A DNA stretch of 64,000 nucleotides from Dendrobates tinctorius (GCF_039654945.1 NW_027361737.1:5642001-5706000), one strand, 5' to 3'; positions 9,520 to 55,130 are shown, numbered from the stretch's first letter. The notes: generated by a model from the letters alone, not told the origin. Made by a program: numbers and translations.

Positions 9520-10606
9520 CTTATGAAGACTTGTAGTTTGGAATGACATCATTCATTTTTTGATAGAAGCTACTGGAAATGGGAATAAATTCCAATTGCT
9601 GCAAAATGGTGAAAACAAACAATTTTACCATTGTAATTTTCTGTTTTTATAGCAGTCATTTTGCTGTAAAAGTGACTTGAAAACATGATGCTTCCGGTCA
9701 GTATGATTACGGCGATACCAAACTTGTATAGTTTTTTATTCATGTAGTGAAGAAAATGTCAAAGCATGTAGAAATAAAATTGCTTTGTGTTGCTATTTCC
9801 AGAGATTTGTACCTTTTTTTTTTTTTCTCGTTTTTCCATCAATGAAGCTGTGTGGGCTTTTTTTTTGTATGGCAACTCAAAGTTTTTATTTGCACCATTT
9901 TAGTCTGCATACAATGCTTATGCTTCATTTTCTTGCCTTTTTATGGGACAGTGACCGAAAAATGGCAATTCTGGTGTTTTAATTTTAATTTTTCTTTGCT
10001 TTACAGAATTTACCATGCAAGTCAGTTCCAGCGATACCAAATATGCTTGTTTTTATTTTTCCCTTCTTAATCGAGTTAAAGGAGGGTTAGTCATATGAAT
10101 GGTTTTCTTGTTTTTTTTAGATTAAAACAAAAATATAGTTGAAATAAATGTGATAGATCACATATTCTATATACTTCAATGGTCTTTTATTGCATTTTAT
10201 AATGAAATTGATGTGGGCTGAGCTTCATAGGACCAAAGTAGAAGTAACGAGGACTATGGCAACCTGAGATCATGGGTGCAGGGGTATAGGAGCTATTGCA
10301 GGCTTGCTCTGGCAAGAAATCTATTTAAATGCCGCAGTTAGTGATTGACAGCTGCATCTACATGATTAAACCACAACTCTCAAAGCTAGCTTTGGTTGTG
10401 GTTACAGGCACATGACGGCTGTATGATCCCAACTCCACATAAGCGGACTCAGGGGAGGACTTACTGCTTATTCTACAGTATGTTCTCCAAGTGGTTAATT
10501 ACACCCCACATACAAAAAGGTTTTTTTATAGGTAGTTGAAGATCTGGTTTGGAGCCATCTAAGTTGTACTACCAGCATTGCTAAGCTGGAGTCATTTATA
10601 CCCTTA

Positions 10607-21019: not shown

Positions 21020-22240
21020 CACTCACTGGCCACTTTATTAGGTACACCATGCTAGTAAGGGGTTGGAACCCCTTTTGCCTTCAGAACTGCCTCAATTCTT
21101 CGTGGCAGAGATTCAACAAGGTGCTGGAAGCATTCCTCAGAGATTTTGGACCATATTGACATGATGGCATCACACAGTTGGCGCAGATTTGTCGGCTGCA
21201 CATCCCTGATGCGAATCTCCCGTTCCACCACATCCCAAAGATGCTCTATTGGATTGAGATCTGGTGACTGAGGAGGCCATTTGAGTACAGTAAACTCATT
21301 GTCATGTTCAAGAAACCAATCTGAGATGATTCGAGCTTTATGACATGGCGCATTATCCTGCTGAAAGTAGCCATCAGATGTTGGGTACATTGTGGTCATA
21401 AAGGGATGGACATGGTCAGCAACAATACTCAGGTAGGCTGTGGCGTTGCAACGATGCTCAATTGGTACCAAGGGGCCCAAAGAGTGCCCAGAAAAAATTC
21501 CCCACACCATGACACCACCACCACCAGCCTGAACCGTTGATACAAGGCAGGATGGATCCATGCTTTCATGTTGTTTACGCCAAATTCTGACCCTACCATC
21601 CCAATGTCGCAGCAGAAATCGAGACTCATCAGACCAGGCAACGTTTTTCCAATCTTCTACTGTCCAATTTCGATGAGCTTGTGCAAATTTTAGCCTCAGT
21701 TTCCTGTTCTTAGCTGAGAGGAGTGGTACCCAGTGTGGTCTTCTGCTGCTGTAGCCCATCTGCCTCAAAGTTCGACGCACTGTGCGTTCAGAGATGCTCT
21801 TCTGCCTACCTTGGTTGTAACGGGTGGCAATTTGAGTCACTGTTGCCTTTCTATCAGCTCGAACCAGTCTGCCCATTCTCCTCTGACCTCTGGCATCAAC
21901 ATGGCATTTCCGGCCACAGAACTGCCGCTCACTGGATTTTTTTTCTTTTTCAGACCATTCTCTGTAAACCCTAGAGATGGTTGTGCGTGAAAATCCCAGT
22001 AGATCAGCAGTTTCTGAAATTCTCAGACCAGCCCTTCTGGCACCAACAATCATGCCACGTTCAAAGGCACTCAAATCACCTTTCTTCCCCATACTGATGC
22101 TCGGTTTGAACTGCAGGAGATTGTCTTGACCATGTCTACATGCCTAAATGCACTGAGTTGCCGCCATGTGATTGGCTGATTAGAAATTAAGTCTTAACAC
22201 ACAGTTGGACAGGTGTACCTAATAAAGTGGCCAGTGAGTG
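21020..22240 (-). mobile_element. Full-length Tc1-family transposon of the DD36E (Incomer) type, nested in the Penelope 3' region
   Basis: Perfect 29-bp TIRs CACTCACTGGCCACTTTATTAGGTACACC; TA TSD; 1221 bp. Confidence 0.93.
21052..22092 (-). CDS. Intact DD36E Tc1 transposase, 346 aa
   Basis: N-terminal HTH; [16 protein letters not shown] and [11 protein letters not shown] motifs; 36 residues between the second D and E. Confidence 0.93.
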
Positions 22241-22473: not shown

Positions 22474-25400
22474 CTAAAGAAATGGCGAGAAGCTGAGGTT
22501 CTCATTAAGTCCTAGTGGTTGGACAGTATCAAGAGTCCAAATCCATCTACTCTCTAGCTGACCAAGACGTTTGGACAGATTTCCACCTCTAATATTGATG
22601 TCCAAGACATCAATTCCCCGTACACGTAAAAGATCACTGTTACATTGATGGAACAGCTTGAAGTGTTTGGGAATAGTTTTGAGGGTGGTTGTTTCATCGT
22701 GACCGTTGGTGGCCTGGATACCCAAAACGTGTTCTCTAATTCGGACTTTAAGTTGTCTAGTTGTCATCCCCACATAGATTAAACCACATGGGCAAATGGC
22801 AAAATAGACAACGTATCTAGTGGTACACGTAATCCGTTTTTTAATTCTGAAATTTTTAGTACCACCAGAATTGAAAAAATCATCACATCTATCCACGTTA
22901 GGGCAAGCCACACAGCGGCCACAAGGAAAGCAACCACCCCCAAAAGAAGCGGTATCCAGAAACGTTTGTGGCTGTGACCCCACGTGGTGACTCCTAGTCA
23001 GGAGATCACGTAGGTTCTTAGCACGTCTAAAAGTGATCATTGGACGTTGAGGCAGAAATTTCTTAATTATAGGATCTACTTGTAGAATAGGCCATGCCCT
23101 TGTTAATGCGGCCCGAACACGATCTGAGCATGGATGATACCTAGTGATGAATCTACATTGATTCTCACCCTCAGGTGACCTAACCTGTTTTTGATATAGA
23201 AGATGGTTACGATTAGAGTACTTGGCCCTATGATAGGCCTTCTTAATAATCCTCCTACTATACCCACGCTCCAGGAAGCGTAGCCTTAATTCCTCCGCCC
23301 GCCTTTCAAAATCTACGTCCGACGAACACAACCGTCTCAAGCGAAGAAACTGACCTATCGGTATGGATGCTATCATATGGTGTGGGTGGCAGGATGAGGC
23401 GTGTAATAGTGTGTTAGTAGAAGTTGGCTTACGGAAAATGTCCGTATTAACATTGCCACTCGTGTCTTTAAAGATGGAGACATCCAAAAAGTTAATTTTA
23501 GTACTATCCCATTCACAGGTCAAGGAGATATTCAATTCACTACTATTGAGGCACTCAATAAATTGCACAAGGTCGATGGACGTGCCTTGCCAGACGAACA
23601 GGATGTCGTCGATATACCGCGTCCAAAAGGGGACACGGTCTATCGACACCATCCGGTCCGACTGGAAGAGGTCCCTCTCCCACAGCCCCAGGAACAGGTT
23701 AGCATAGGCCGGCGCAAAGGCCGCGCCCATGGCTGTCCCCTGGAGCTGCAGGAAAAAGGACCCCTTAAACACAAAGAAATTGTGCGTGAGGGTGAATTCA
23801 AGCAGTTCCAGCAAGAGTCCCTTCAGACCACTCGACAAATTAGAGGTTTGAAGAAAAAACCGCACCGCGGCAATGCCATCTTTATGTCTGATATTCGTAT
23901 ATAGGGATTCTACATCCGCTGAAACTAGCAAGGATTCACCCTCAAGGCATAGGCCATCGACCTTGCGCAAAAGTTCCCCTGTATCCTTCAAATAGGAAGG
24001 GAGAGTAATAACAAGGGGCTGGAGGTGGAAATCGATCCAACGATTGACGTGCTCCAAGAAGTTACCCCTCCCTGACACAATAGGCCGACCAGGTGGCGAT
24101 CTCAGATCCTTATGGACCTTCGGCAATAAATAGAATGTGGCCACTGTGGGCTCACTAATCAGTAGTGCCGAAGCCAGCTCCTTGGTGATAATGCCATCCC
24201 GTGTTGCCCTATTAATGATACTCTCCAATTGATTAGAATATGCGCAAAGGGGATTATACGTCAGTTTTTTATAGCAAATGCTATTGTTCAACTGGCGATA
24301 AGCTTCCTTCTCATATAACTTAGTTGGCCACAGGACGACATTACCATCTTTATCGGCCGGCTTCAGCACCACATCCGGAAGATTCTGAAAATATCTAAGT
24401 CTAGCACGTTCCTCCCTGGTCAAATTATCATCCCTAATAAATTTAGGGATCTGAGAGAGTTCACGAGTCACCACCTGAACGAAAAGGTCAACACTAGTGC
24501 AAGTAGCCAGGGGGGGAAACTTCTTGGATCGTGGACGGATAGATGGGGGATCTTACCTCCCTCATGTTCCACCGCCAGCTCCTCCAAGGCTCTCAGGGCC
24601 TTTTGTTCCTCCTCTGTGGGGAAAAGAACATTGTTAACATCATTAAAGAAATGCCTCTTTAGCAGTAGTGACCTGGCAAACACGTTTAAATCCTTAATAG
24701 TGGCAAAAGTATTGAATTCCGGAGTAGGTGAGAATGAGAAACCCCTACCCAAAAGAGACAGGTCGGAGGGGGATAATATATAATGACTAAGGTTAATTAC
24801 CCTATTATCCCTTTTATCAAAGCCAGTTTGATGACCGTGTTGCCTTCTATAGGGGTGGTATGAATGGTCCCTCAGGCGTGCTGTACTAGAAGAAGTAGAC
24901 AGATCCGACTGTCCACTTGTAGATGTAAGTGAAGTATTAGATGGTATACGAGGTAGATTTGGGTAGGCTTTCTTCCATAAATAGACTTTATTGCTCTGAT
25001 AGTCCTTTACATCCCTGTTATATTTAGAGAATTGAGTCTCCTGGATTTTCTTAGCGAGACCATCAAGGGATTTCTCCAACTCATTATTAAATTGTTGCAA
25101 CTTCTCCTTAGGACAATCATTATCCAGACCTATTTGTGTGTCATCAATAAGTTTATCCAGTTCACTAATATTCGTGCTATTCAAATTAATCAAAAGCTGC
25201 ATAAGAATAAAGGAGCAGCCATTACAGGCTTCCTCCCATTTCTTAACAAATACATCATCTTCTACGGGGAAGGTAGGAGTTACACGAATCCTTAGCCCTC
25301 TAGAAATCATTTTATTCGAAAGATATTTCTCTAAAAACATTTTATTCCACCAAAGCCTAGAACGTCTGATTACTGAATTCTTAATAGTCATCAGCCTTTC

Positions 25401-47378: not shown

Positions 47379-49071
47379 GTGAGTAATAGCTCTTTTGATA
47401 TTTAGAAATAAGTCCCATATTTATTTGTCTATGCTACCTTAAAGGGATTGTCTATGATACGTTAAAGATATTATCACCTATTCCCTAGCCAGCTGAATTC
47501 GTAGGGTCCAACTGCTGGGAACTCAACCGATTAGCTGAACAAGGCACTATTTTCCCCTTTCAAATGGAGCAGCAGCATGCATACTCGACAGCTGCTCCAA
47601 TCATTCTCATAGAAAATGAATGGAGTGACCATCGAGCATGCGCACTGCCAATCCATTCTAAACCGGTTCGTACAGGTCCCACCAGTCCGATCCACACAAT
47701 CGTCAAGTTATCACCGATATTATCAAACTTCTTTTCACCTGACAACTTTATTATGACCACAAATTATGTATACACATGTTTTGCTTCTGATCTAGTAGTC
47801 AGGTGCAAAATAGAAGTGACCAGCAACAATAATTTTTGTAATTAAAAAATAACATTTATTAGATAAAGAATAATAGATTAAAATTTCAGAAAAAGGTGTT
47901 GAAATAGGAGATACAGGAATAAATAATCAATATGTAGCAGTCTGGTATATAATGTTCATAAATTTATATTCCCCAAATCTTTTTATCAATCTTATAATTA
48001 AAAAAATAGCGGATTTTTAAAACAGCCCAAATTATGGTATAGAACATTCCAAAGCTAGGAATTGATTTCAATTATTTTTAAGTAAAGCACTTTCACACTT
48101 AAATATGTAAATATATGCACATTAATCTCTCACTAGAAGGTCGGTGATTTTTTTTTTGTATTATATATTGTGAGGTAGCGCTGTCATTCAGGGTTGGGGG
48201 GACACTCGCTTGGCAGCGAATAAGTCACATCCAGCACGGGTTTTCATAAAGCAGTATAATCCATGCGGTTTATTTCAGCTTCATAAACCATCACAGCAAC
48301 AGAAAACAGCATACAGTCAGCATTGCCTCCATTACAGAGTCCAGCTCTGTTATCCTTGCATCACACAAGATGTGCACTGTTCAATGCGCAGGCTTTTTAG
48401 CCACCAAGTTATCTTACCCACGTCAGGGTTGCCTCGTGCTGTTTCACCATGCTGCACGTTTATTCCCTCCAGGGAACTAACAGGCACATATCGCCATTAC
48501 ACACAGCGTCCACATGTGCCGTCAGGCAGGAAGCCCTATGTCAGCGGGACCTTCCTCTCTGGACCAATCGGGTCCCTGCATTCACCCACATGTGACCAGA
48601 CCTCAGGTACCTTATATGGTCCATAACCACACCCACAGGTGATCACATGGCTATGACCTCACCCAAGGTCCTATTGCAGACAATCACACACACAGGCTTC
48701 CCTGACACATTGTAACAGAACGTACTAGTCAGCAGTACCTCTGCTGATCATTATGATCTTTCAGTATCCTACCCCTATCAGGGCAGTGGAAATGTTTATA
48801 CGGCTGTCCTGGGACACCCACACAGCACCCCCTAGTGGACACAGCGGTCACTGCACCACATACCTCCCCCCTATGTTCAAACCTGTGGGGTTGAACACAC
48901 AGCATAACCCCCGGCTCTTGAGACTGGGCACTCACTACACCTTGCCCACCAGGTCGAGAGAACGTCTCCATTTGTCATACGGCCTCATCTCTACGTTAGG
49001 CCTCCCCCGCTCCCAGCGGTCATAATACCGGTCATTGTCTTTGACCCCCCAGTCACGGTTTGTCTGCGTCA

Positions 49072-50664
49072 TCAGACACTCTCTAGTCTCCACCTGTCTG
49101 CAGTATGCTTCGTCACCTGATCTCTCACTGACCGTCTCTTTCGGTTGGTGCGGTCATAAGTCTTAGTAGAGTCTGCTGTCTGGTCTGAGTCTGACTCAGT
49201 CAGCGTCTCACAGGAAATATGGTCTTTCAACGTCATCCTGCCAGTCGAACTACCCCTTGCTGACACTCTTCTGCCATCTGCCCTGTCACTTCTTGGAGGA
49301 ACCGTTCGGGTCCTTACATCTTGGGTTGGAGGCGGCTGCCACCTGGTATTCTTTATTTCTTTATTAATTCGCCGACGGTCCAGCCTCAACTGCTCAATTT
49401 CTTGCAGGTACTCCACTTGATACTCCACGAGCATCCGAAATTCTCTCAGGCTTTCCACGGAGCCAACCACCATGATGGAAATCCTATCCACTTCCCTGGA
49501 TACCTGGTCATCATCAGGAGGGATCCTCACCCTCACCACACCGGAGATATTCACAAGGTCTTGCATTACCTTCCCGGACCTTCCAATGATTCTCCCAATC
49601 AGAGTTTTGGGTACCAGAACCACATCTTTCCTCAAACCCAACCGATCCATAGCCTCTCTTGCTATCTCTAGGCGTCGAGCAGCCTTCATATTACTCTGCC
49701 TAACCAATTGTTTGACACGTAGACACTGCAAATGCATCTCTTTCAGGACAGCTACTCGGTTTGATGTATCTTCCCTGGCTGATACTATCACCAGCTGCCG
49801 AGTCTCAGGTGCCCAGTGCACCTCACATGCTTTGACCGCCTCTTTGAAAGCCTCATGTACCCCTTCCTCCGCACAGGCTTCTTGCATGTTTTCGGGTACC
49901 TCGATCACAGATTTGAAGGTCGTGGTCTTGCTCTCTTCCTGGACAGAAGACTCTGGCTTTACCACGGACACTTCCCTCACTACAGTTGACCCGACCAGGT
50001 GACTGTCTTCTTCGGCTCTTTGCTCACCAACTTCAGGAGATTTTATCTCTTCACGAGCCTTTGCCAAGATAGGTACCGGCAGTTCCTTCTTGTTATCACT
50101 CGGACCCAGCTGCTGCACATCTCCGTCCAAGCTCTTCTCCCGCAGAAGACCTTCTACTACTCCTCTGAGTTCCTCAATCTCTTCCTTAAGGCTCTTGTTC
50201 ACACTTTGCCAGGTGGACAGGTGACCTCTGAGCTCCAAGACTTCTTTCTCGAGCCCCTCCACCTTGTGCTCGGCCAATTGTCTCAAGATTCTCTCTTGTT
50301 TGACATGTTCTTCCACTGTCTCTTTTATTAGTTGTATCTCCTGATCTTGTTCTCTTTTGGCCAGCACGTGTCGCACCACTAATTCTTTAACTATATCGTC
50401 AAAGGGCACCACTGAGTCAGTCCTATCAGTCGAGTGAACCCCCCGGTTACCCTCTGACTGTGTTTCTATTCCTGTTATCCTCTCGATCAGGTTACCACCA
50501 GTCCTGTCATGAGTTTCAGTCAGCACAGCATTAGATTCTGTCCTAGTGGTGGCCACTGGCAATAACACGTCACAGTCACACCACACCGTACGGTGAACCC
50601 CCAAGACACTCTCTATCCGTGTGTCAGCTCCGCTCTTTTTGTTTACCACACCATTCTCATTCAC
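49072..50664 (-). CDS. Chimeric coiled-coil + FXR1-derived KH0/KH2 RNA-binding protein (retroelement-borne, intronless)
   Basis: VPENMQEAC...HEAFKEAVKAC...PETRQLVIVSA...EMHL, VPKTLIGRIIGRSGKVMQDLVNISGVVRVRI, YLQEIEQLRLDR and SDQTAD...TNRKRRS align with FXR1; ORF opens at GTG and has no ATG until residue 260. Confidence 0.85.
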   Translation of the reverse strand: MNENGVVNKKSGADTRIESVLGVHRTVWCDCDVLLPVATTRTESNAVLTETHDRTGGNLIERITGIETQSEGNRGVHSTDRTDSVVPFDDIVKELVVRHVLAKREQDQEIQLIKETVEEHVKQERILRQLAEHKVEGLEKEVLELRGHLSTWQSVNKSLKEEIEELRGVVEGLLREKSLDGDVQQLGPSDNKKELPVPILAKAREEIKSPEVGEQRAEEDSHLVGSTVVREVSVVKPESSVQEESKTTTFKSVIEVPENMQEACAEEGVHEAFKEAVKACEVHWAPETRQLVIVSAREDTSNRVAVLKEMHLQCLRVKQLVRQSNMKAARRLEIAREAMDRLGLRKDVVLVPKTLIGRIIGRSGKVMQDLVNISGVVRVRIPPDDDQVSREVDRISIMVVGSVESLREFRMLVEYQVEYLQEIEQLRLDRRRINKEIKNTRWQPPPTQDVRTRTVPPRSDRADGRRVSARGSSTGRMTLKDHISCETLTESDSDQTADSTKTYDRTNRKRRSVRDQVTKHTADRWRLESV

Positions 50665-51361
50665 ACTGTGGAACTGACATCAGGTCAGTAAATTCGTCTG
50701 ACGCAATTCTTTCTCCGGTCGCCCTTATGTCTGGCCTGTCCACGTTAGGAGGCGTCAGCGTCTCAGTGTCTGCTAGCCCTACAGTAGAAACATCTCTATC
50801 CTCCTGCCCCACATCTTTAAACATGACAAAGTCCCGGCGCCTCTCAAAGGTATGCACTAAGTTTGGTGGCCTACTACCACCTTGGCACTCCCCCTTTGTC
50901 ATCTCAATTAGGACTCTGTCCACCTTATAATTCACAATGACCCCGTGGAGGCAGCGAACTCTGACGTTTTTCTCGGTCAGAGCTAAAATGAGCAGAGTTC
51001 CTTTGAGAGTCACCTGACTCTTTGAGTCCAGCCTACCAGGGACTCCTTCCCGATGCAGCATCACGTTACACACCTGCAGCCCATCGTCACTATCCGGAAA
51101 GGATATCCCACATTCTGACCAAGTCATACACACACACTGCGGTACTCCAGATGTACCCACTGAGTCATCTAGCGCTGTCATTTCTTCAAACTTGGCCCTT
51201 TTCTGGACCACCACCCCACTTTGGGTTGCCGCCCCCTCCTGGGACTCCACCCCTTTATGGGTTACCGCGCCAATTTGGGACTTCACCCCCTTTTGTGCTA
51301 CTACCCCGATTTGGGTCACCGCCCCCTTTTGGGACTCCACTCCCTTTCGGGATCTCCCCAT
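50657..51361 (-). CDS. Upstream ORF: 6-aa repeats plus degenerate Gypsy retropepsin
   Basis: ATG at 51361 in a strong context (GACATGG); LDSKSQVTL, VRVRCLHG and RRDF resemble LDSGSxVTL, VxCIHG and LGRDF. Confidence 0.6.
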   Translation of the reverse strand: MGRSRKGVESQKGAVTQIGVVAQKGVKSQIGAVTHKGVESQEGAATQSGVVVQKRAKFEEMTALDDSVGTSGVPQCVCMTWSECGISFPDSDDGLQVCNVMLHREGVPGRLDSKSQVTLKGTLLILALTEKNVRVRCLHGVIVNYKVDRVLIEMTKGECQGGSRPPNLVHTFERRRDFVMFKDVGQEDRDVSTVGLADTETLTPPNVDRPDIRATGERIASDEFTDLMSVPQCE

Positions 51362-54344
51362 GTCTGTTATACCGGTCTTCTCAGACCACAGTTCACACCA
51401 CAGTTTGTGTCTCTTACGATACCACACAAGTCTTTGTTGGCACCACCACAGCTCCTGCTGTCACCGATCACCGGCTGCTGTTCACACACAGCTGCTGGTG
51501 TCACTGCAGCTCCTGCTGCGCCGTCTTCGTGGACCCGCTGATCCACCGGAAGCCGCTTGTCCCCTTCGTAACCCCGCCGGGTTACCGGAAGCCGCTTGTC
51601 ACCCTCGAAGATAAAAGAAACCACAAAAGCGCGCCCATAGGGCCTTACCAGTGCAGGTATAATGGGTATAAAGAAATAATACAGGGTACTCACCCTTAAT
51701 AGTTGTGTAAAGCCACAACTACTGTATCCGCTTAGTCACATGCAATAACGCTGCAGCAGGATGGTACCAATGCTGAAAGAGGAGATCCCAAAAAAAGAAA
51801 AACACCAGGTCCCTGTGCTGCGAGATCTTCGTGACCCCACTGAGCCACAGCAAGCACCTTCAGGTTTTGCAGAGGAAAAAAGGAAAAACACATGCAGGAA
51901 AAAACTCCAAAAAACTCACGTATCCTGTCTGTGCACTATTCAGGACGTACCGTCTCCGCCTGAGACCGTCCAACACACAGGGCACACCGGGTGCTATTCA
52001 GGGAGCCGACCCTCCTCCCAGGGTCTCCCAACACACCGGCCTCACCAGGTCCAAGGTCATATCACGTGTTCCAGGGATCCAATTCCTCTCTCAGAACCTC
52101 CCAACACTGACCCTCCAGGACCTTGCTCACTGATCCAGGTCAGTACAACAACGAACACCTGTCGTTACCTGTGTCGGCCACACAGGTCCTCGGGTACCTC
52201 TTATCCGCAGAGGCACCCTAGCAATCACCCGTCTCTTCCACTGAGCTGCTGTCAGTGTACGGCTTTCACAATAGTCAGCCCTCCTGGCTCAGCGTTGCCA
52301 GCACTGCAACATGTGCTGTTGGAACTGCAGCCCTTAGCAACAAAGTATTTTTTTTTTTTTGGCAGTCCTTTTCCGTTGCCCCCAGCAACAAGGCTCCTAT
52401 ATTGCCCTTAGCAATTCTCCACCATTTGTGAGGTAGCGCTGTCATTCAGGGTTGGGGGGACACTCGCTTGGCAGCGAATAAGTCACATCCAGCACGGGTT
52501 TTCATAAAGCAGTATAATCCATGCGGTTTATTTCAGCTTCATAAACCATCACAGCAACAGAAAACAGCATACAGTCAGCATTGCGTCCATTACAGAGTTC
52601 AGCTCTGTTATCCTTGCATCACACAAGATGTGCACTGTTCAATGCGCAGGCTTTCTAGCCACCAAGTTATCTTACCCACGTCAGGGTTGCCTCGTGCTGT
52701 TTCACCATGCTGCACGTTTATTCCCTCCAGGGAACTAACAGGCACATATCGCCATTACACACAGCGTCCACATGTGCTGTCAGGCAGGAAGCCCTATGTC
52801 AGCGGGACCTTCCTCTCTGGACCAATCGGGTCCCTGCATTCAACCACATGTGACCAGACCTCAGGTACCTTATATGGTCCATAACCACACCCACAGGTGA
52901 TCACATGGCTATGACCTCACCCAAGGTCCTATTGCAGACAATCACACACACAGGCTTCCCTGACACATTGTAACAGGACGTACTAGTCAGCAGTACCTCT
53001 GCTGATCATTATGATCTTTCAGTATCCTACCCCTATCAGGGCAGTGGAAATGTTTATACGGCTGTCCTGGGACACCCACACAGCACCCCCTAGCGGACAC
53101 AGCGGTCACTGCACCACAATATGTATTGAAATGTCAGATGATATGTCACCAGGGATCTAATAGGAATAAAATGTACAATATGAAGCTATTTATTTTTACC
53201 TTCAATCAAGGCTCACATAGAGTAATTTGACGCAGATTGTCTCCAAAATGCACATTAAAAAAGCTTGCTATTCCCTGCATGCTCTTCCTTTTCATTTCAT
53301 TGAAAGATTAACGAGTTTTTTTTTTTTTTTTTTAAACCTTGCAATGGTAAAAAGCAGTGATACATCCCTTCATCGAATCTGCTCCAAATTTGACAGTCAA
53401 TTCAAAAGGCAGCAAAAAAACTATAGAAAAAATTGCTTCAAAACCTCCTAAAATGGCTTTAAAATATTATTTAGGAATAGCAATTGGTTCCACTAAAGCA
53501 GCATTCCCTGAAGTGGATTACTCTTGAAAAACTTGGCTTATTGTCACCTCCAAAAACAGATGACTATATCCCTACAGACTAGGTCAGGGCTTGTGTTTTT
53601 ATCTCTATTCTAAAGAGATGAGCAAAAGTTTCCTATACACTTTAAATAAATTTGTCCAAACTTGCCAAATCCTACCGGAGCTGCAAAAGTGGCCAGGCCC
53701 TGCACCTAACATAAACTAATGAAGTCAGATGGTATATGCGCTTACATAATATTGGGAATAGGGATTTTTATCCTGATGAGGCCTTTTATCCCATTTACAA
53801 AATAGAGCCAAAGATCAGATTCCTGACAGCTATATTGTTTGTTCTGTATGAGGCTGCTGAGAAAGGCGAGTGCAGCGCTGTGCAGCCTGAAAGGGAAGGA
53901 ATGGAGCAGCAGTCGCACATGCGCACTGCCACTCCACTCTTACAGGGATAAAATTTCCCCATTCTACTGATCGGTACTTATCCCAGCAGTTGGACACCCA
54001 TCAATCAACTTGGGAATAAGTGACAACTTGTTTTCACAGGTCAACCTCAAAGAATTAACTAGACTGCCTCCACTCAGGAACCTGTTTTCTATGCACTGAC
54101 AAGTCATCGTAGAGGTGATCCCTACCTAGAAGGATTCACCTTTGATTGAGAAAAATTTAATATACTTCCCATACAGTGCCGGATGCAGGAGAAATGAAAA
54201 GATGCATCGAGGTTACTGATTGGTTGTTATAGCTAAGGGTGGAGAAGCTTGACCAGCAGCAATCAGTTGATTACTTTTGGCTTGTTTGGGTTTATACATA
54301 GCAATTATTACTACATTCCAAACAGGAATACAGTCATATGTACA

Positions 54345-55130
54345 GTTACATTTTGGAAGAAGGTCCTGTGGACTGATGAAACAAAGATTGAGTTGTTTGG
54401 TCATACAAAAAGGCGTTCTGCATGGAGGCTAAAAAACACAGCATTCCAAGAAAAACACTTGCTACCCACAGTAAAATTTGGTGGAGGTTCCATCATGCTT
54501 TGGGGCTGTGTGGCCAATGCCAGCACCGGGAATCTTGTTAAAGTAGAGGGTCACATGGATTCAACTCCGTATCAGCAGATTCTTGACAATAATGTGCAAG
54601 AATCAGTGAAGAAGTTGAAGTTACGCAGGGGATGGATATTTCAGCAAGACAATGATCCAAAACACCGCTCCAAATCTACTCAGTCATTCATGCAGAGGAA
54701 CAATTACAATGTTCTGGAATGGCCATCCCAGTCCCCAGACCTGAATATCATTGAACATCTGTGGGATGATTTGAAGCGGGTTGTCCATGCTCGGCGACCA
54801 TCAAACTTAACTGAACTGGACTTGTTTTGTAAACAGGAATGGTCACAAATACCTTCATCCAGGATCCAGGAACTCATTAATAGCTACAGGAAGCGACTAG
54901 AGGCTGTTATTTTTGTTGAGGTGCCCATACTTTTGCACCGGTCAAATTTTGTTTAAATGCAGATTGCACATTTTCTGTTAGTACAATAAACCTCATTTGA
55001 ATCCAGAAATATAACTGAGTCCTTCAGTTATTAGATATATGAAACTGAAATAGCTGTTGCAAAAACCAAAATTGTTATAAAGAAAAAAGGTTAACATTAA
55101 TAGGGGTGCCCAAACTTTAACATATCACTG
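54345..55130 (+). mobile_element. 5'-truncated Tc1 (DD34E) element
   Basis: [31 protein letters not shown]; right terminus ...ATATCACTG+TA. Confidence 0.88.

What the first reader, a model, noticed from the sequence alone, without database searches (positions are those of the whole stretch)
48169..53118. Young LTR retrotransposon that has replaced pol with a captured fragile-X family (FXR1) RNA-binding gene
Seen: all cis signals are intact (692-bp LTRs with ~7 differences, ATAT TSD, tRNA-Ala-type PBS, PPT), yet the 3.57-kb interior has no RT, RNase H or integrase. Its longest ORF (530 codons) carries an intronless block that aligns with FXR1 KH0, KH2, the post-KH2 helix and the SDQTAD..TNRRRRS segment of the FXR1 tail. 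The protein is strongly diverged from FXR1 but still open, while the LTRs are nearly identical. Inference: the capture is old, the cargo has been kept open by selection, and the element was still being mobilised in trans recently. Established: FMR1/FXR proteins bind RNA, oligomerise, enter RNA granules and are linked to Argonaute/piRNA silencing in Drosophila. Hypothesis: a mobile family using a host-derived FXR mimic as an anti-silencing factor or as an RNA chaperone/packaging protein.
Basis: partly seen in the sequence, partly recalled or inferred. Interest (0 to 1): 0.95.

Follow-up and report, generated by a model that had tools for sequence, protein, structure and literature searches.

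The report
LTR retroelement carrying captured FXR1 gene
A poison-frog mobile element has lost its own replication genes and instead carries an intron-free, rearranged copy of the host RNA-binding gene FXR1. Selection has kept this gene readable in a family of such elements that has jumped for tens of millions of years.

Summary
Window 48169-53118 is a minus-strand LTR element. It has 692-bp LTRs with 7 mismatches, an ATAT target-site duplication, a TGGTGGAGA primer-binding site, a purine tract and no room for pol.

Its 530-codon ORF has an FMRP-type KH0 domain, one KH domain with an intact GXXG loop and the post-KH helix. On trees it sits inside the FXR1 clade, apart from FMR1 and FXR2. It is collinear with exons 5 (part) to 14 of the 83-kb, 17-exon Dendrobates tinctorius FXR1 gene, without introns, Agenet domains or KH1.

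It belongs to a family:
- Nine further copies in D. tinctorius, Ranitomeya imitator, R. variabilis and Anomaloglossus baeobatrachus each lie between their own LTR pair (95-99.9% identical).
- Eight of the nine have matching 4-bp duplications that differ between loci, and the flanks are unrelated.
- At least 17 paralogs are annotated in D. tinctorius.
- ORFs of 700-1000 codons stay open although subfamilies differ by dS 0.2-1.6. dN/dS is 0.18-0.40 on the KH block.

The window copy is decayed, with three frame breaks relative to intact relatives. New here: conserved tandem leader hairpins with compensatory changes, and a 92-residue predicted helix. The protein's function and the helper element are unknown. 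I found no description in the searched literature.

The parts
53119..53122 (.). Target-site duplication ATAT, on the 5' side of the minus-strand element
52427..53118 (-). 5' LTR, 692 bp, TG..CA ends
   Evidence: 7 mismatches to the other LTR, K2P 0.0102
52406..52424 (-). Primer-binding-site-like TGGTGGAGAATTGCTAAGG, 2 nt after the LTR
   Evidence: The same TGGTG.. position is found in all 10 elements. The tRNA-Ala assignment is from memory only.
51525..51863 (-). Leader with three 37-nt units (51827-51863, 51564-51600, 51525-51561). Each forms a 7-bp hairpin with an RGYG tetraloop. This is a candidate packaging or dimerisation signal.
   Evidence: 100% of cells paired in 17 distinct units from 10 elements, and 3 pairs with compensatory double changes. 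No Rfam match.
51196..51347 (-). 18-nt tandem repeats coding QKGxxx hexapeptides at the start of the ORF
   Evidence: The repeats are shared with Dendrobates, Ranitomeya and Anomaloglossus copies.
50657..51427 (-). First ORF piece (256 codons): QKG repeats plus a degenerate retropepsin-like module (about 50783-51100). It is joined to the next piece in intact relatives.
   Evidence: The protease assignment is inconclusive.
50670..50675 (-). Frame break 1, relative to P0019 and P0004
49072..50664 (-). 530-codon ORF: disordered N-terminal part, long helix, FXR1-derived KH0, KH and helix, then a basic tail
50128..50403 (-). Residues 88-179: a single 92-residue helix (pLDDT above 90), a candidate coiled coil. 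It is not FXR1-derived.
   Evidence: The Anomaloglossus copies have no alignable counterpart.
49675..49929 (-). KH0 domain (residues 246-330)
   Evidence: Pfam KH_9 E=9e-15. Foldseek to FMRP KH0: rmsd 1.2-1.5 A over 74-80 aligned columns, 42-44% identity.
49348..49632 (-). Single KH domain (KH2-type, GRSG loop) plus the post-KH helix (residues 345-439). KH1 is missing between KH0 and this domain.
49093..49135 (-). Frame break 2, near the end of the 530-codon ORF
48941..48962 (-). Frame break 3
48729..48971 (-). Last ORF piece (80 codons). It is homologous to the C-termini of P0002 and P0004 and runs across the purine tract into the 3' LTR.
48861..48896 (-). Polypurine tract AGGGGGGAGGTA (48861-48872) with the conserved upstream box GTTCAACCCCACA (48884-48896)
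   Evidence: The box and tract are conserved in the dendrobatid copies. The Anomaloglossus copies have purine runs with a degenerate or absent box.
48169..48860 (-). 3' LTR, 692 bp
48165..48168 (.). Target-site duplication ATAT, on the 3' side

Best explanation
This is one slightly decayed copy, about 2 million years old, of a non-autonomous LTR retroelement family of poison frogs and their relatives (Dendrobatoidea).

Shown:
- An ancestor of the family took up a spliced FXR1 mRNA fragment, running from mid exon 5 to at least exon 14. The fragment has no Agenet domains.
- It sits downstream of a short element-derived reading frame, in the place where an autonomous element would carry its replication genes.
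- The dendrobatid lineage later lost exactly one KH unit (KH1). Its copies also carry a long helical segment upstream of KH0 that has no alignable counterpart in the Anomaloglossus copies.
- Copies keep inserting with 4-bp duplications.
- The lineages that give rise to new copies keep the ORF open, with dN/dS well below 1.

Inferred:
- Reverse transcriptase, integrase and particle proteins come in trans from an unidentified autonomous partner, probably a class I endogenous retrovirus.
- The conserved tandem leader hairpins are the RNA signal that this partner recognises.
- The FXR1-derived protein works for the element itself. It would be an oligomeric RNA-binding factor (helix, KH0, KH and basic tail, a layout like LINE-1 ORF1p or a nucleocapsid). 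It would bind the element's own transcript and favour its stability, translation or entry into the helper's particles.
- That role would explain why copies without a working ORF leave few descendants.
For: Element anatomy and recent insertion.

FXR1 origin:
- Pfam and PDB hits.
- BLASTP against D. tinctorius FXR1, E=2e-42.
- Trees, with P0024 identified as FXR1.
- Host gene exon map against the intronless cargo.

Family and mobility:
- All 9 other loci have LTR pairs 95.4-99.9% identical, interiors of 3.0-3.9 kb and unrelated flanks. Eight of the nine have matching 4-bp duplications that differ between loci. The ninth, L005, has a truncated 3' LTR match, so its duplication could not be read.
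- A chance extra copy lies at L007:1-1596, open over 532 codons.
- At least 17 paralogs are annotated in D. tinctorius.
- The family is present in both Aromobatidae and Dendrobatidae.

Selection:
- dN/dS over the whole ORF is 0.26-0.50. On the KH0-KH-helix block it is 0.18-0.40, with upper 95% limits at or below 0.59.
- dN/dS is 0.46 even for a young pair with dS 0.05.
- A neutral simulation gives about 1 stop per 1% divergence, and 0.6% of ORFs stay open at 5% divergence.

RNA-binding competence:
- The GXXG loop is kept in every copy.
- The KH0 and KH folds are predicted at pLDDT of about 90 and match FMRP structures.

Oligomerisation candidate: a 92-residue helix with pLDDT above 90.

Cis signal: leader hairpins with covariation. 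The covariation score exceeded all 500 shuffles, and every 'slid' control scored much lower. The hairpins are found only in family leaders within about 370 kb of frog DNA.
Against: - No autonomous partner was found, and no RT-bearing element shares the LTR ends, PBS or hairpins.
- The class of the element is inferred only from the 4-bp duplication, the 2-nt PBS spacer and a weak protease resemblance (Asp_protease_2 E=0.05, RVP E=0.18).
- No expression, RNA-binding or mobilisation data exist here.
- The window copy carries three frame breaks although its LTRs are 99% identical. If the breaks predate insertion, the protein can be supplied in trans, which weakens a strict cis-preference argument.
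- Purifying selection shows that the protein matters to whatever makes new copies. It does not show what the protein does.
- The pairwise dN/dS values come from copies chosen through annotated proteins, which biases the sample toward open ORFs.
Confidence: 0.6

Rival explanations
1. Anti-silencing decoy. The protein mimics host FXR1, FMRP or FXR2. It keeps the KH0 region and KH2 but lacks the Agenet readers. It would act as a dominant negative, or would sequester partners of small-RNA or translational control, and so relieve repression of the element or its helper in the germline.
For: The captured part keeps KH0 and the segment after it. From published work on FMRP as I recall it, that segment lies in the region mapped for FXR-family homo- and heteromerisation. 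The Agenet domains are cleanly excluded in all copies. The purifying selection fits this reading as well as it fits the main one.
Against: The protein is only 33-50% identical to FXR1, while host FXR1 is 96-99% conserved among frogs. A mimic that must dock on conserved host partners would be expected to stay closer to its model. KH1 was lost and a new helix is present, which looks like re-engineering rather than mimicry. No interaction data exist.
Confidence: 0.2
2. Transduced gene of a replication-defective exogenous retrovirus, analogous to viral oncogene capture. It would have been carried by a helper virus and endogenised repeatedly, so the ORF was selected during infectious spread rather than during intragenomic retrotransposition.
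For: The architecture (element-derived N-terminal frame fused to an intronless host gene, replication genes missing) is that of transducing retroviruses. dS between subfamilies (0.7-1.6) is several times what host DNA would accumulate in about 36 million years at 2.5e-9 per site per year (rate and date from PMC11152451). That points to many error-prone replication cycles.
Against: Persistence across two frog families, with many germline copies of different ages and several coexisting subfamilies in one genome, is typical of intragenomic amplification. No env gene and no helper virus were seen.
Confidence: 0.12
3. Host-serving gene family. The FXR1-like genes would be kept by selection on the frog, for example as germline RNA regulators, and the LTR element would only be the vehicle that duplicated them.
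For: The NCBI pipeline annotates them as protein-coding genes. dN/dS is below 1.
Against: Every copy examined still has both LTRs, and nine of the ten have readable target-site duplications. LTR ages range from about 0.2 to 9 million years, and the sites are unrelated. Selection on the host would act on fixed orthologous loci, not on a turnover of new insertions. The window copy and others are decaying in place.
Confidence: 0.06
4. Neutral passenger. The FXR1 fragment is inert cargo that is still open only by chance.
For: The window copy is frame-broken. Close pairs give dN/dS up to 0.7 by NG86 and 0.96 by YN00.
Against: ORFs of 700-1000 codons are open in at least 10 copies across lineages that differ by dS 0.2-1.6. 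Simulation gives no open ORFs at 10% neutral divergence or more. The confidence intervals for dN/dS on the KH block exclude 1.
Confidence: 0.02

Closest known systems
Replication-defective transducing retroviruses (gag-onc type capture of a spliced host gene)
   Same: An intronless host coding sequence sits between LTRs, fused behind an element-derived reading frame. Replication genes are missing, so a helper is needed.
   Different: Here the captured gene is an RNA-binding protein, not a growth regulator. The element is a germline multi-copy family kept for more than about 36 million years in two frog families, under purifying selection, rather than a short-lived somatic or tumour virus. No helper is known.
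Non-autonomous LTR elements mobilised in trans (mouse ETn/MusD, VL30; plant LARD and TRIM)
   Same: LTRs, PBS, PPT and a leader signal are retained. There is no pol. Insertions are young, which implies trans-mobilisation.
   Different: As far as I recall, those elements carry no conserved protein-coding gene of host origin. This family keeps a 700-1000-codon ORF under selection.
Host-gene capture by transposons with retained selection (plant KI-MULEs with a ULP1-like protease; gene fragments in maize Bs1 and other plant LTR retrotransposons)
   Same: A host gene was taken up by a mobile element, amplified with it, and in the KI-MULE case evolves under purifying selection.
   Different: Those cases are in plants, and mostly involve DNA transposons or non-functional fragments. 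I found no vertebrate LTR-element counterpart in the literature searched.
LINE-1 ORF1p
   Same: The layout is similar: a long coiled coil, an RNA-binding domain and a basic C-terminal part. ORF1p is an element-encoded RNA chaperone that coats its own transcript.
   Different: There is no homology, since the domain here is KH rather than RRM. The oligomeric state and cis-binding of the frog protein are untested. This is a functional analogy only.
FXR1 (host gene; D. tinctorius P0183, locus L010)
   Same: KH0, KH2 with its GXXG loop, the post-KH2 helix and part of the tail are collinear with FXR1. On trees the cargo lies inside the FXR1 clade.
   Different: There are no Agenet/Tudor domains, no KH1 in dendrobatid copies and no introns. 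Identity is 33-50%. New N-terminal modules are present, and the gene is embedded in an LTR element.
GACG hairpin pair of the MLV-type packaging signal
   Same: Tandem short hairpins with a conserved G-rich tetraloop lie in the leader downstream of the PBS.
   Different: The loops are GGCG, AGCG or AGTG rather than GACG. There are 1-6 copies of a 39-nt unit. No family in Rfam's library of 4227, which as I recall includes the gammaretroviral encapsidation signal, came near its threshold. The resemblance is recalled from memory, not tested.

Membership tests
LTR retroelement (provirus-like structure) | Two near-identical direct LTRs with TG..CA ends | tested here: met
   692 bp, 7 mismatches. The same structure is found in 9 related loci.
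LTR retroelement (provirus-like structure) | Target-site duplication | tested here: met
   ATAT at both flanks. The other copies have ATAC, GTAC, GCAC, GCAT, ATAG, ATAT (twice) and TACT/TACC, which matches at 3 of 4 bases. L005 could not be read.
LTR retroelement (provirus-like structure) | PBS after the 5' LTR and a purine tract before the 3' LTR | tested here: met
   TGGTGGAGA.. lies 2 nt after the LTR, and AGGGGGGAGGTA abuts the 3' LTR. The tRNA identity was not testable.
LTR retroelement (provirus-like structure) | gag, pro and pol genes (autonomy) | tested here: not met
   No RT, RNase H, integrase or capsid domain was found. The interior is filled by the leader and the FXR1-type ORF. The element is therefore non-autonomous.
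Retropepsin (retroviral protease) in the N-terminal module | D-T/S-G active-site motif and an I-I-G-R-D-like flap motif | tested here: inconclusive
   LVDSGG and IIGRD are present in the Ranitomeya copies. The window has the degenerate forms RLDSKS and ERRRD.
Retropepsin (retroviral protease) in the N-terminal module | Significant profile or fold match | tested here: not met
   The best Pfam hits are Asp_protease_2 E=0.05 and RVP E=0.18, both below cut-off. The profile search against PDB found nothing. The AF2 model has pLDDT 50. hhalign against a Ty3/gypsy protease gave probability 0.1.
FMR1/FXR1/FXR2 protein family | Tandem Agenet/Tudor domains at the N-terminus | tested here: not met
   They are absent from all element copies. 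Homology starts at about FXR1 residue 113-124, in mid exon 5.
FMR1/FXR1/FXR2 protein family | KH0 domain | tested here: met
   Pfam KH_9 E=9e-15, above cut-off. Foldseek rmsd 1.2-1.5 A to FMRP KH0.
FMR1/FXR1/FXR2 protein family | KH1 and KH2 in tandem | tested here: not met
   The window and all dendrobatid copies lack one KH unit, about FXR1 residues 215-274. The Anomaloglossus copies keep both.
FMR1/FXR1/FXR2 protein family | KH2 with a GXXG loop and the following conserved helix (FXMRP1_C_core) | tested here: met
   The loop is GRSG in the window and GR[LFS]G in the other dendrobatid copies (GRNG in Anomaloglossus). The helix at residues 403-439 has pLDDT of about 90. PF12235 hits are found in relatives.
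FMR1/FXR1/FXR2 protein family | Descent from FXR1 rather than FMR1 or FXR2 | tested here: met
   Trees (SH-aLRT 97-99). P0024 is FXR1. The position within FXR1 is unresolved.
Processed (mRNA-derived) gene copy | Contiguous coding sequence where the parent gene has introns | tested here: met
   In L010, host exons 5-14 are spread over about 9 kb and the whole gene spans 83 kb. The element ORFs are uninterrupted.
Gammaretroviral core encapsidation signal (Rfam) | Match to the covariance model | tested here: not met
   The Rfam scan of the whole element found nothing near threshold.

The most novel reading that the evidence does not exclude
A vertebrate retroelement lineage has replaced its own structural RNA-binding function with a re-engineered host gene. 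In this reading, the FXR1-derived protein (helix, KH0, one KH domain and a basic tail) is the element's own RNP or packaging protein. It would recognise the tandem leader hairpins. This host-derived 'surrogate Gag/ORF1p' would have kept a pol-less family mobile for more than about 36 million years across Dendrobatoidea.
Probability: 0.3. Interest if true: 0.9.

Novelty: new variant of a known kind. Interest (0 to 1): 0.8.

Why it matters
Host-gene capture by retroviruses is known from short-lived oncogenic viruses. Capture by transposons is known mainly from plants. This case is different. A vertebrate germline LTR family has carried a captured RNA-binding gene through many rounds of copying, remodelled it and kept it under selection.

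If the protein serves the element, it shows that a mobile element can recruit a host translational or RNA-granule regulator as its own accessory or structural factor. It would also give a natural experiment on which parts of the fragile-X protein family suffice for RNA handling.

There is a practical point too. These copies are annotated in frog genomes as 'FXR1-like', 'FMR1 homolog' or 'restin homolog' genes. They can mislead gene-family and expression studies.

Tried and rejected
Search for the autonomous partner:
- A word-index protein search with the protease-like module found only the family itself.
- Motif scans of all fetched DNA for the PPT/LTR junction, the LTR/PBS junction and the leader hairpin found only family copies.
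- The second LTR element in L004 is an unrelated Ty3/gypsy element.
- Exact-pattern scans of the metagenome and viral collections with the hairpin found nothing.

Protease identity of the N-terminal module: Pfam at relaxed thresholds, a profile search against PDB, an AF2 model and hhalign against a gypsy protease were all inconclusive. I did not send the low-confidence model to the fold search.

Gag remnant: a Gag_p30 hit (E=0.001-0.009) appears only in the window subfamily, at residues 15-58, and not in other subfamilies. I treat it as chance. The leader ORFs have no Pfam hit.

KH1 loss as exon-8 skipping: host exon 8 covers residues 211-266, while the deletion is about 215-274 (60 residues, one KH unit). 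The boundaries are offset, and the Anomaloglossus copies retain KH1. A later internal deletion between the two similar KH units is more likely than capture of a skipped mRNA.

Timing the capture within frog FXR1: host FXR1 is too conserved to resolve this.

Exon maps from Xenopus FXR1: the two look-ups found no record.

Family outside Dendrobatoidea: among the named hits of the exhaustive search, none was from outside. A KH1-less sturgeon hit is a partial FMR1 gene model.

The consensus lines that the alignment tools print automatically were ignored.


Full report
**What is at the coordinates**

Window 48169-53118 is bounded by two 692-bp direct repeats, 48169-48860 and 52427-53118. They differ at 7 positions and have no indel. 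The K2P distance is 0.0102. Both begin TG and end CA, and ATAT flanks both sides.

The coding content and the cis signals show that the element lies on the minus strand. The right-hand repeat is the 5' LTR. It is followed, after two bases, by TGGTGGAGAATTGC.., a primer-binding-site-like sequence. The left-hand repeat is preceded by AGGGGGGAGGTA. The window contains no N and no second copy.

At the rate used for Dendrobates tinctorius LTR dating (2.5e-9 per site per year; PMC11152451), the LTR divergence corresponds to about 2 million years.

**The ORF**

The 530-codon ORF (49072-50664, minus strand) matches Pfam KH_9 (FMRP KH0) at E=9e-15 and KH_1 at E=5e-7. Both are above their curated cut-offs. 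It also matches FMRP chains in the PDB at E=5e-15.

An AlphaFold model built on a family alignment shows:
- a disordered N-terminus;
- one 92-residue helix (88-179, pLDDT above 90);
- KH0 (250-330);
- one KH domain (345-401);
- a 37-residue helix (403-439);
- a disordered basic tail.

Foldseek places the model on FMRP KH1-KH2 and on FMRP KH0. For KH0 the rmsd is 1.2-1.5 A over 74-80 aligned columns, at 42-44% identity. No RT, RNase H, integrase or capsid domain is present. The interior is fully accounted for by an 850-nt leader plus sequence homologous to the family protein.

**Which host gene, and how it was taken up**

The best canonical relative in an exhaustive search of 1.84 billion representative proteins is P0024. 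P0024 is 98-99% identical to FXR1 of D. tinctorius, Anomaloglossus and other frogs.

In two trees the element proteins form one clade (SH-aLRT 97-98) inside the FXR1 clade (97-99). They lie apart from FMR1 and FXR2. Their position within FXR1 is unresolved because host FXR1 is nearly invariant.

I fetched the D. tinctorius FXR1 gene (L010, 83 kb) and mapped its 17 exons. The element ORFs are uninterrupted. They are collinear with FXR1 from about residue 113-124, which is the middle of exon 5, just after the Agenet domains. The collinearity runs through KH0, KH2 and the helix, into the exon-14 tail. The cargo therefore came from spliced mRNA.

All dendrobatid copies lack about FXR1 residues 215-274, which is one KH unit (KH1). 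The boundaries are offset from exon 8 (residues 211-266), and the Anomaloglossus copies keep KH1. I therefore read this as a later internal deletion between the two similar KH units.

The GXXG loop of the remaining KH domain is intact in every copy.

**A family, not a single accident**

Homologs of the ORF occur only in dendrobatoid frogs among the hits I could name. These are D. tinctorius, Ranitomeya imitator, R. variabilis and Anomaloglossus baeobatrachus (Aromobatidae). D. tinctorius alone has at least 17 annotated paralogs on different scaffolds.

I fetched nine loci. In each, the intronless ORF lies between its own LTR pair (95.4-99.9% identical), with an interior of 3.0-3.9 kb. Eight of the nine have matching 4-bp duplications: ATAT twice, ATAC, GTAC, GCAC, GCAT and ATAG, plus TACT/TACC, which matches at 3 of 4 bases. 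At the ninth (L005) the 3' LTR match is truncated, so its duplication could not be read. All have a TGGTG.. site two bases after the LTR. The dendrobatid copies share a conserved ..GTTCAACCCCACA..AGGGGGGAGGTA tract. The 300-bp flanks share no similarity between loci.

A tenth related copy turned up by chance at L007:1-1596.

LTR sequences differ strongly between subfamilies. Several subfamilies coexist in D. tinctorius. The window's closest relatives are the P0001, P0002, P0003 and P0019 group of D. tinctorius, at 74-75% identity to the 530-residue ORF.

**Architecture of the full ORF**

Intact relatives encode 700-1000 residues, in this order:
- a variable run of QKGxxx hexapeptides, from 18-nt tandem repeats;
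- one or two modules with retropepsin-like motifs (LVDSGG and IIGRD in Ranitomeya; degenerate in the window);
- a linker;
- the long helix (no alignable counterpart in Anomaloglossus);
- the FXR1-derived block;
- a tail that reads across the purine tract into the 3' LTR.

The protease assignment did not pass any test. The best Pfam E-values are 0.05 and 0.18, the profile search of the PDB found nothing, and the model has pLDDT 50. I leave it as inconclusive.

The window copy is cut into four frames relative to P0019, P0002 and P0004. The breaks lie at about 50670-50675, 49093-49135 and 48941-48962. The 530-codon ORF is simply the largest surviving piece.

**Selection**

Pairwise dN/dS over the whole ORF is 0.26-0.50 between subfamilies. 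On the KH0-KH-helix block it is 0.18-0.40, with bootstrap upper limits at or below 0.59. A young pair (dS 0.05) gives 0.46. Close pairs approach 0.6-0.9, as expected if copies drift after insertion.

In a neutral simulation of an 895-codon ORF, about one stop arises per 1% divergence, and only 0.6% of ORFs stay open at 5%. Yet lineages that differ by dS 0.2-1.6 keep ORFs of 700-1000 codons. The protein is therefore required by whatever produces new copies.

The sample was drawn through annotated proteins, so the share of intact copies is not known. The two unbiased copies are one open (L007:1-1596) and one broken (the window).

**A conserved leader structure**

The most conserved nucleotides between distant copies are a 39-nt unit in the leader, repeated 1-6 times. 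In the window the units lie at 51525-51561, 51564-51600 and 51827-51863.

Each unit forms a 7-bp hairpin with an RGYG tetraloop. Across 17 distinct units from ten elements, every cell of the stem is a standard pair. Three pairs change on both sides (GC/AU, GC/AU/GU, AU/CG). The covariation score exceeds all 500 shuffles, and all slid controls score much lower.

The motif occurs nowhere else in about 370 kb of fetched frog DNA. It matches no Rfam family. Its position and form recall, from memory, the GACG hairpin pair of MLV-type packaging signals. I propose it as the signal by which a helper recognises the RNA. This is an inference.

**Mechanism and rivals**

Shown:
- a pol-less LTR family;
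- cargo derived from FXR1 mRNA;
- repeated recent insertion;
- purifying selection on the cargo;
- a conserved structured leader.

Inferred:
- trans-mobilisation by an unidentified class I-like endogenous retrovirus (4-bp duplications, 2-nt PBS spacer; ERV1 elements are the youngest LTR class in D. tinctorius, PMC11152451);
- a role for the protein as an oligomeric RNA-binding factor acting on the element's own RNA.

Rivals:
- a decoy of host FXR proteins that relieves silencing;
- a transduced gene of a defective exogenous retrovirus. The very high dS relative to the host rate is unexplained and fits this or many error-prone cycles;
- a host-serving gene family;
- a neutral passenger, which the data reject.

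**Known or new**

Full-text searches for FXR1 or KH capture by LTR elements, for poison-frog transposable elements and for anuran endogenous retroviruses found no description of this family. The kind of event, host-gene transduction by a retroelement, is known. A long-lived vertebrate germline family that maintains a remodelled RNA-binding gene is, as far as I can tell, a new variant.

Noticed in passing
window 51525-51863 (minus strand); L001:9350-9822, L002:9411-9525, L006:8726-8840, L008:8264-8392 and others: Tandem 39-nt leader units, each a 7-bp hairpin with an RGYG tetraloop. They show compensatory changes and vary in copy number (1-6) between elements. NCBI gene models of one subfamily (P0008, P0013) translate through them.
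   Followed up: yes
all element pairs, set against the host rate quoted in PMC11152451: Synonymous divergence between subfamilies (0.7-1.6) is several times what host DNA should accumulate since the dendrobatid ancestor. This implies a much higher substitution rate in the element lineage, or an older origin.
   Followed up: partly
L008:8663-11968: In one Anomaloglossus copy the protease-like ORF and the FXR1-like ORF are in the same frame, separated by a single stop codon (9857-9859). This could be a simple nonsense mutation or a read-through arrangement.
   Followed up: no
P0008 and P0013 (D. tinctorius subfamily; L003): This subfamily carries two tandem copies of the protease-like module. 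The window subfamily and P0004 carry one.
   Followed up: partly
window 21052-22092 (-), 54249-54956 (+), 22474-24474 (-): Tc1/mariner-type transposase ORFs (HTH_Tnp_Tc3_2 plus DDE_3; DDE_3 alone) and an ORF with a weak RVT_1 match. The window is transposon-rich.
   Followed up: partly
window 47606-47659 and 53887-53940: A 54-nt direct repeat (74% identical) lies on either side of the element, about 0.5-0.8 kb outside the LTRs. The element may have landed inside another repeat.
   Followed up: no
L004:15590-21280: A full-length Ty3/gypsy element on the minus strand, with a 1431-codon gag-pro-pol ORF and LTRs 99.9% identical. It is unrelated to the FXR1 family.
   Followed up: partly
L001:15846-22688 and L001:5615-7648: Long satellite arrays (42-nt and about 69-nt periods) lie next to the element.
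   Followed up: no
protein records P0005, P0009, P0018, P0003, P0021, P0023, P0026, P0029: Public annotation names element-borne ORFs 'restin homolog', 'fragile X messenger ribonucleoprotein 1 homolog' or 'FXR1-like'. These are transposon genes, not orthologs.
   Followed up: yes
window 49072-50664, residues 15-58; P0019 residues 191-233: A weak Gag_p30 match (E=0.001-0.009) appears only in the window's subfamily. It is probably chance.
   Followed up: yes
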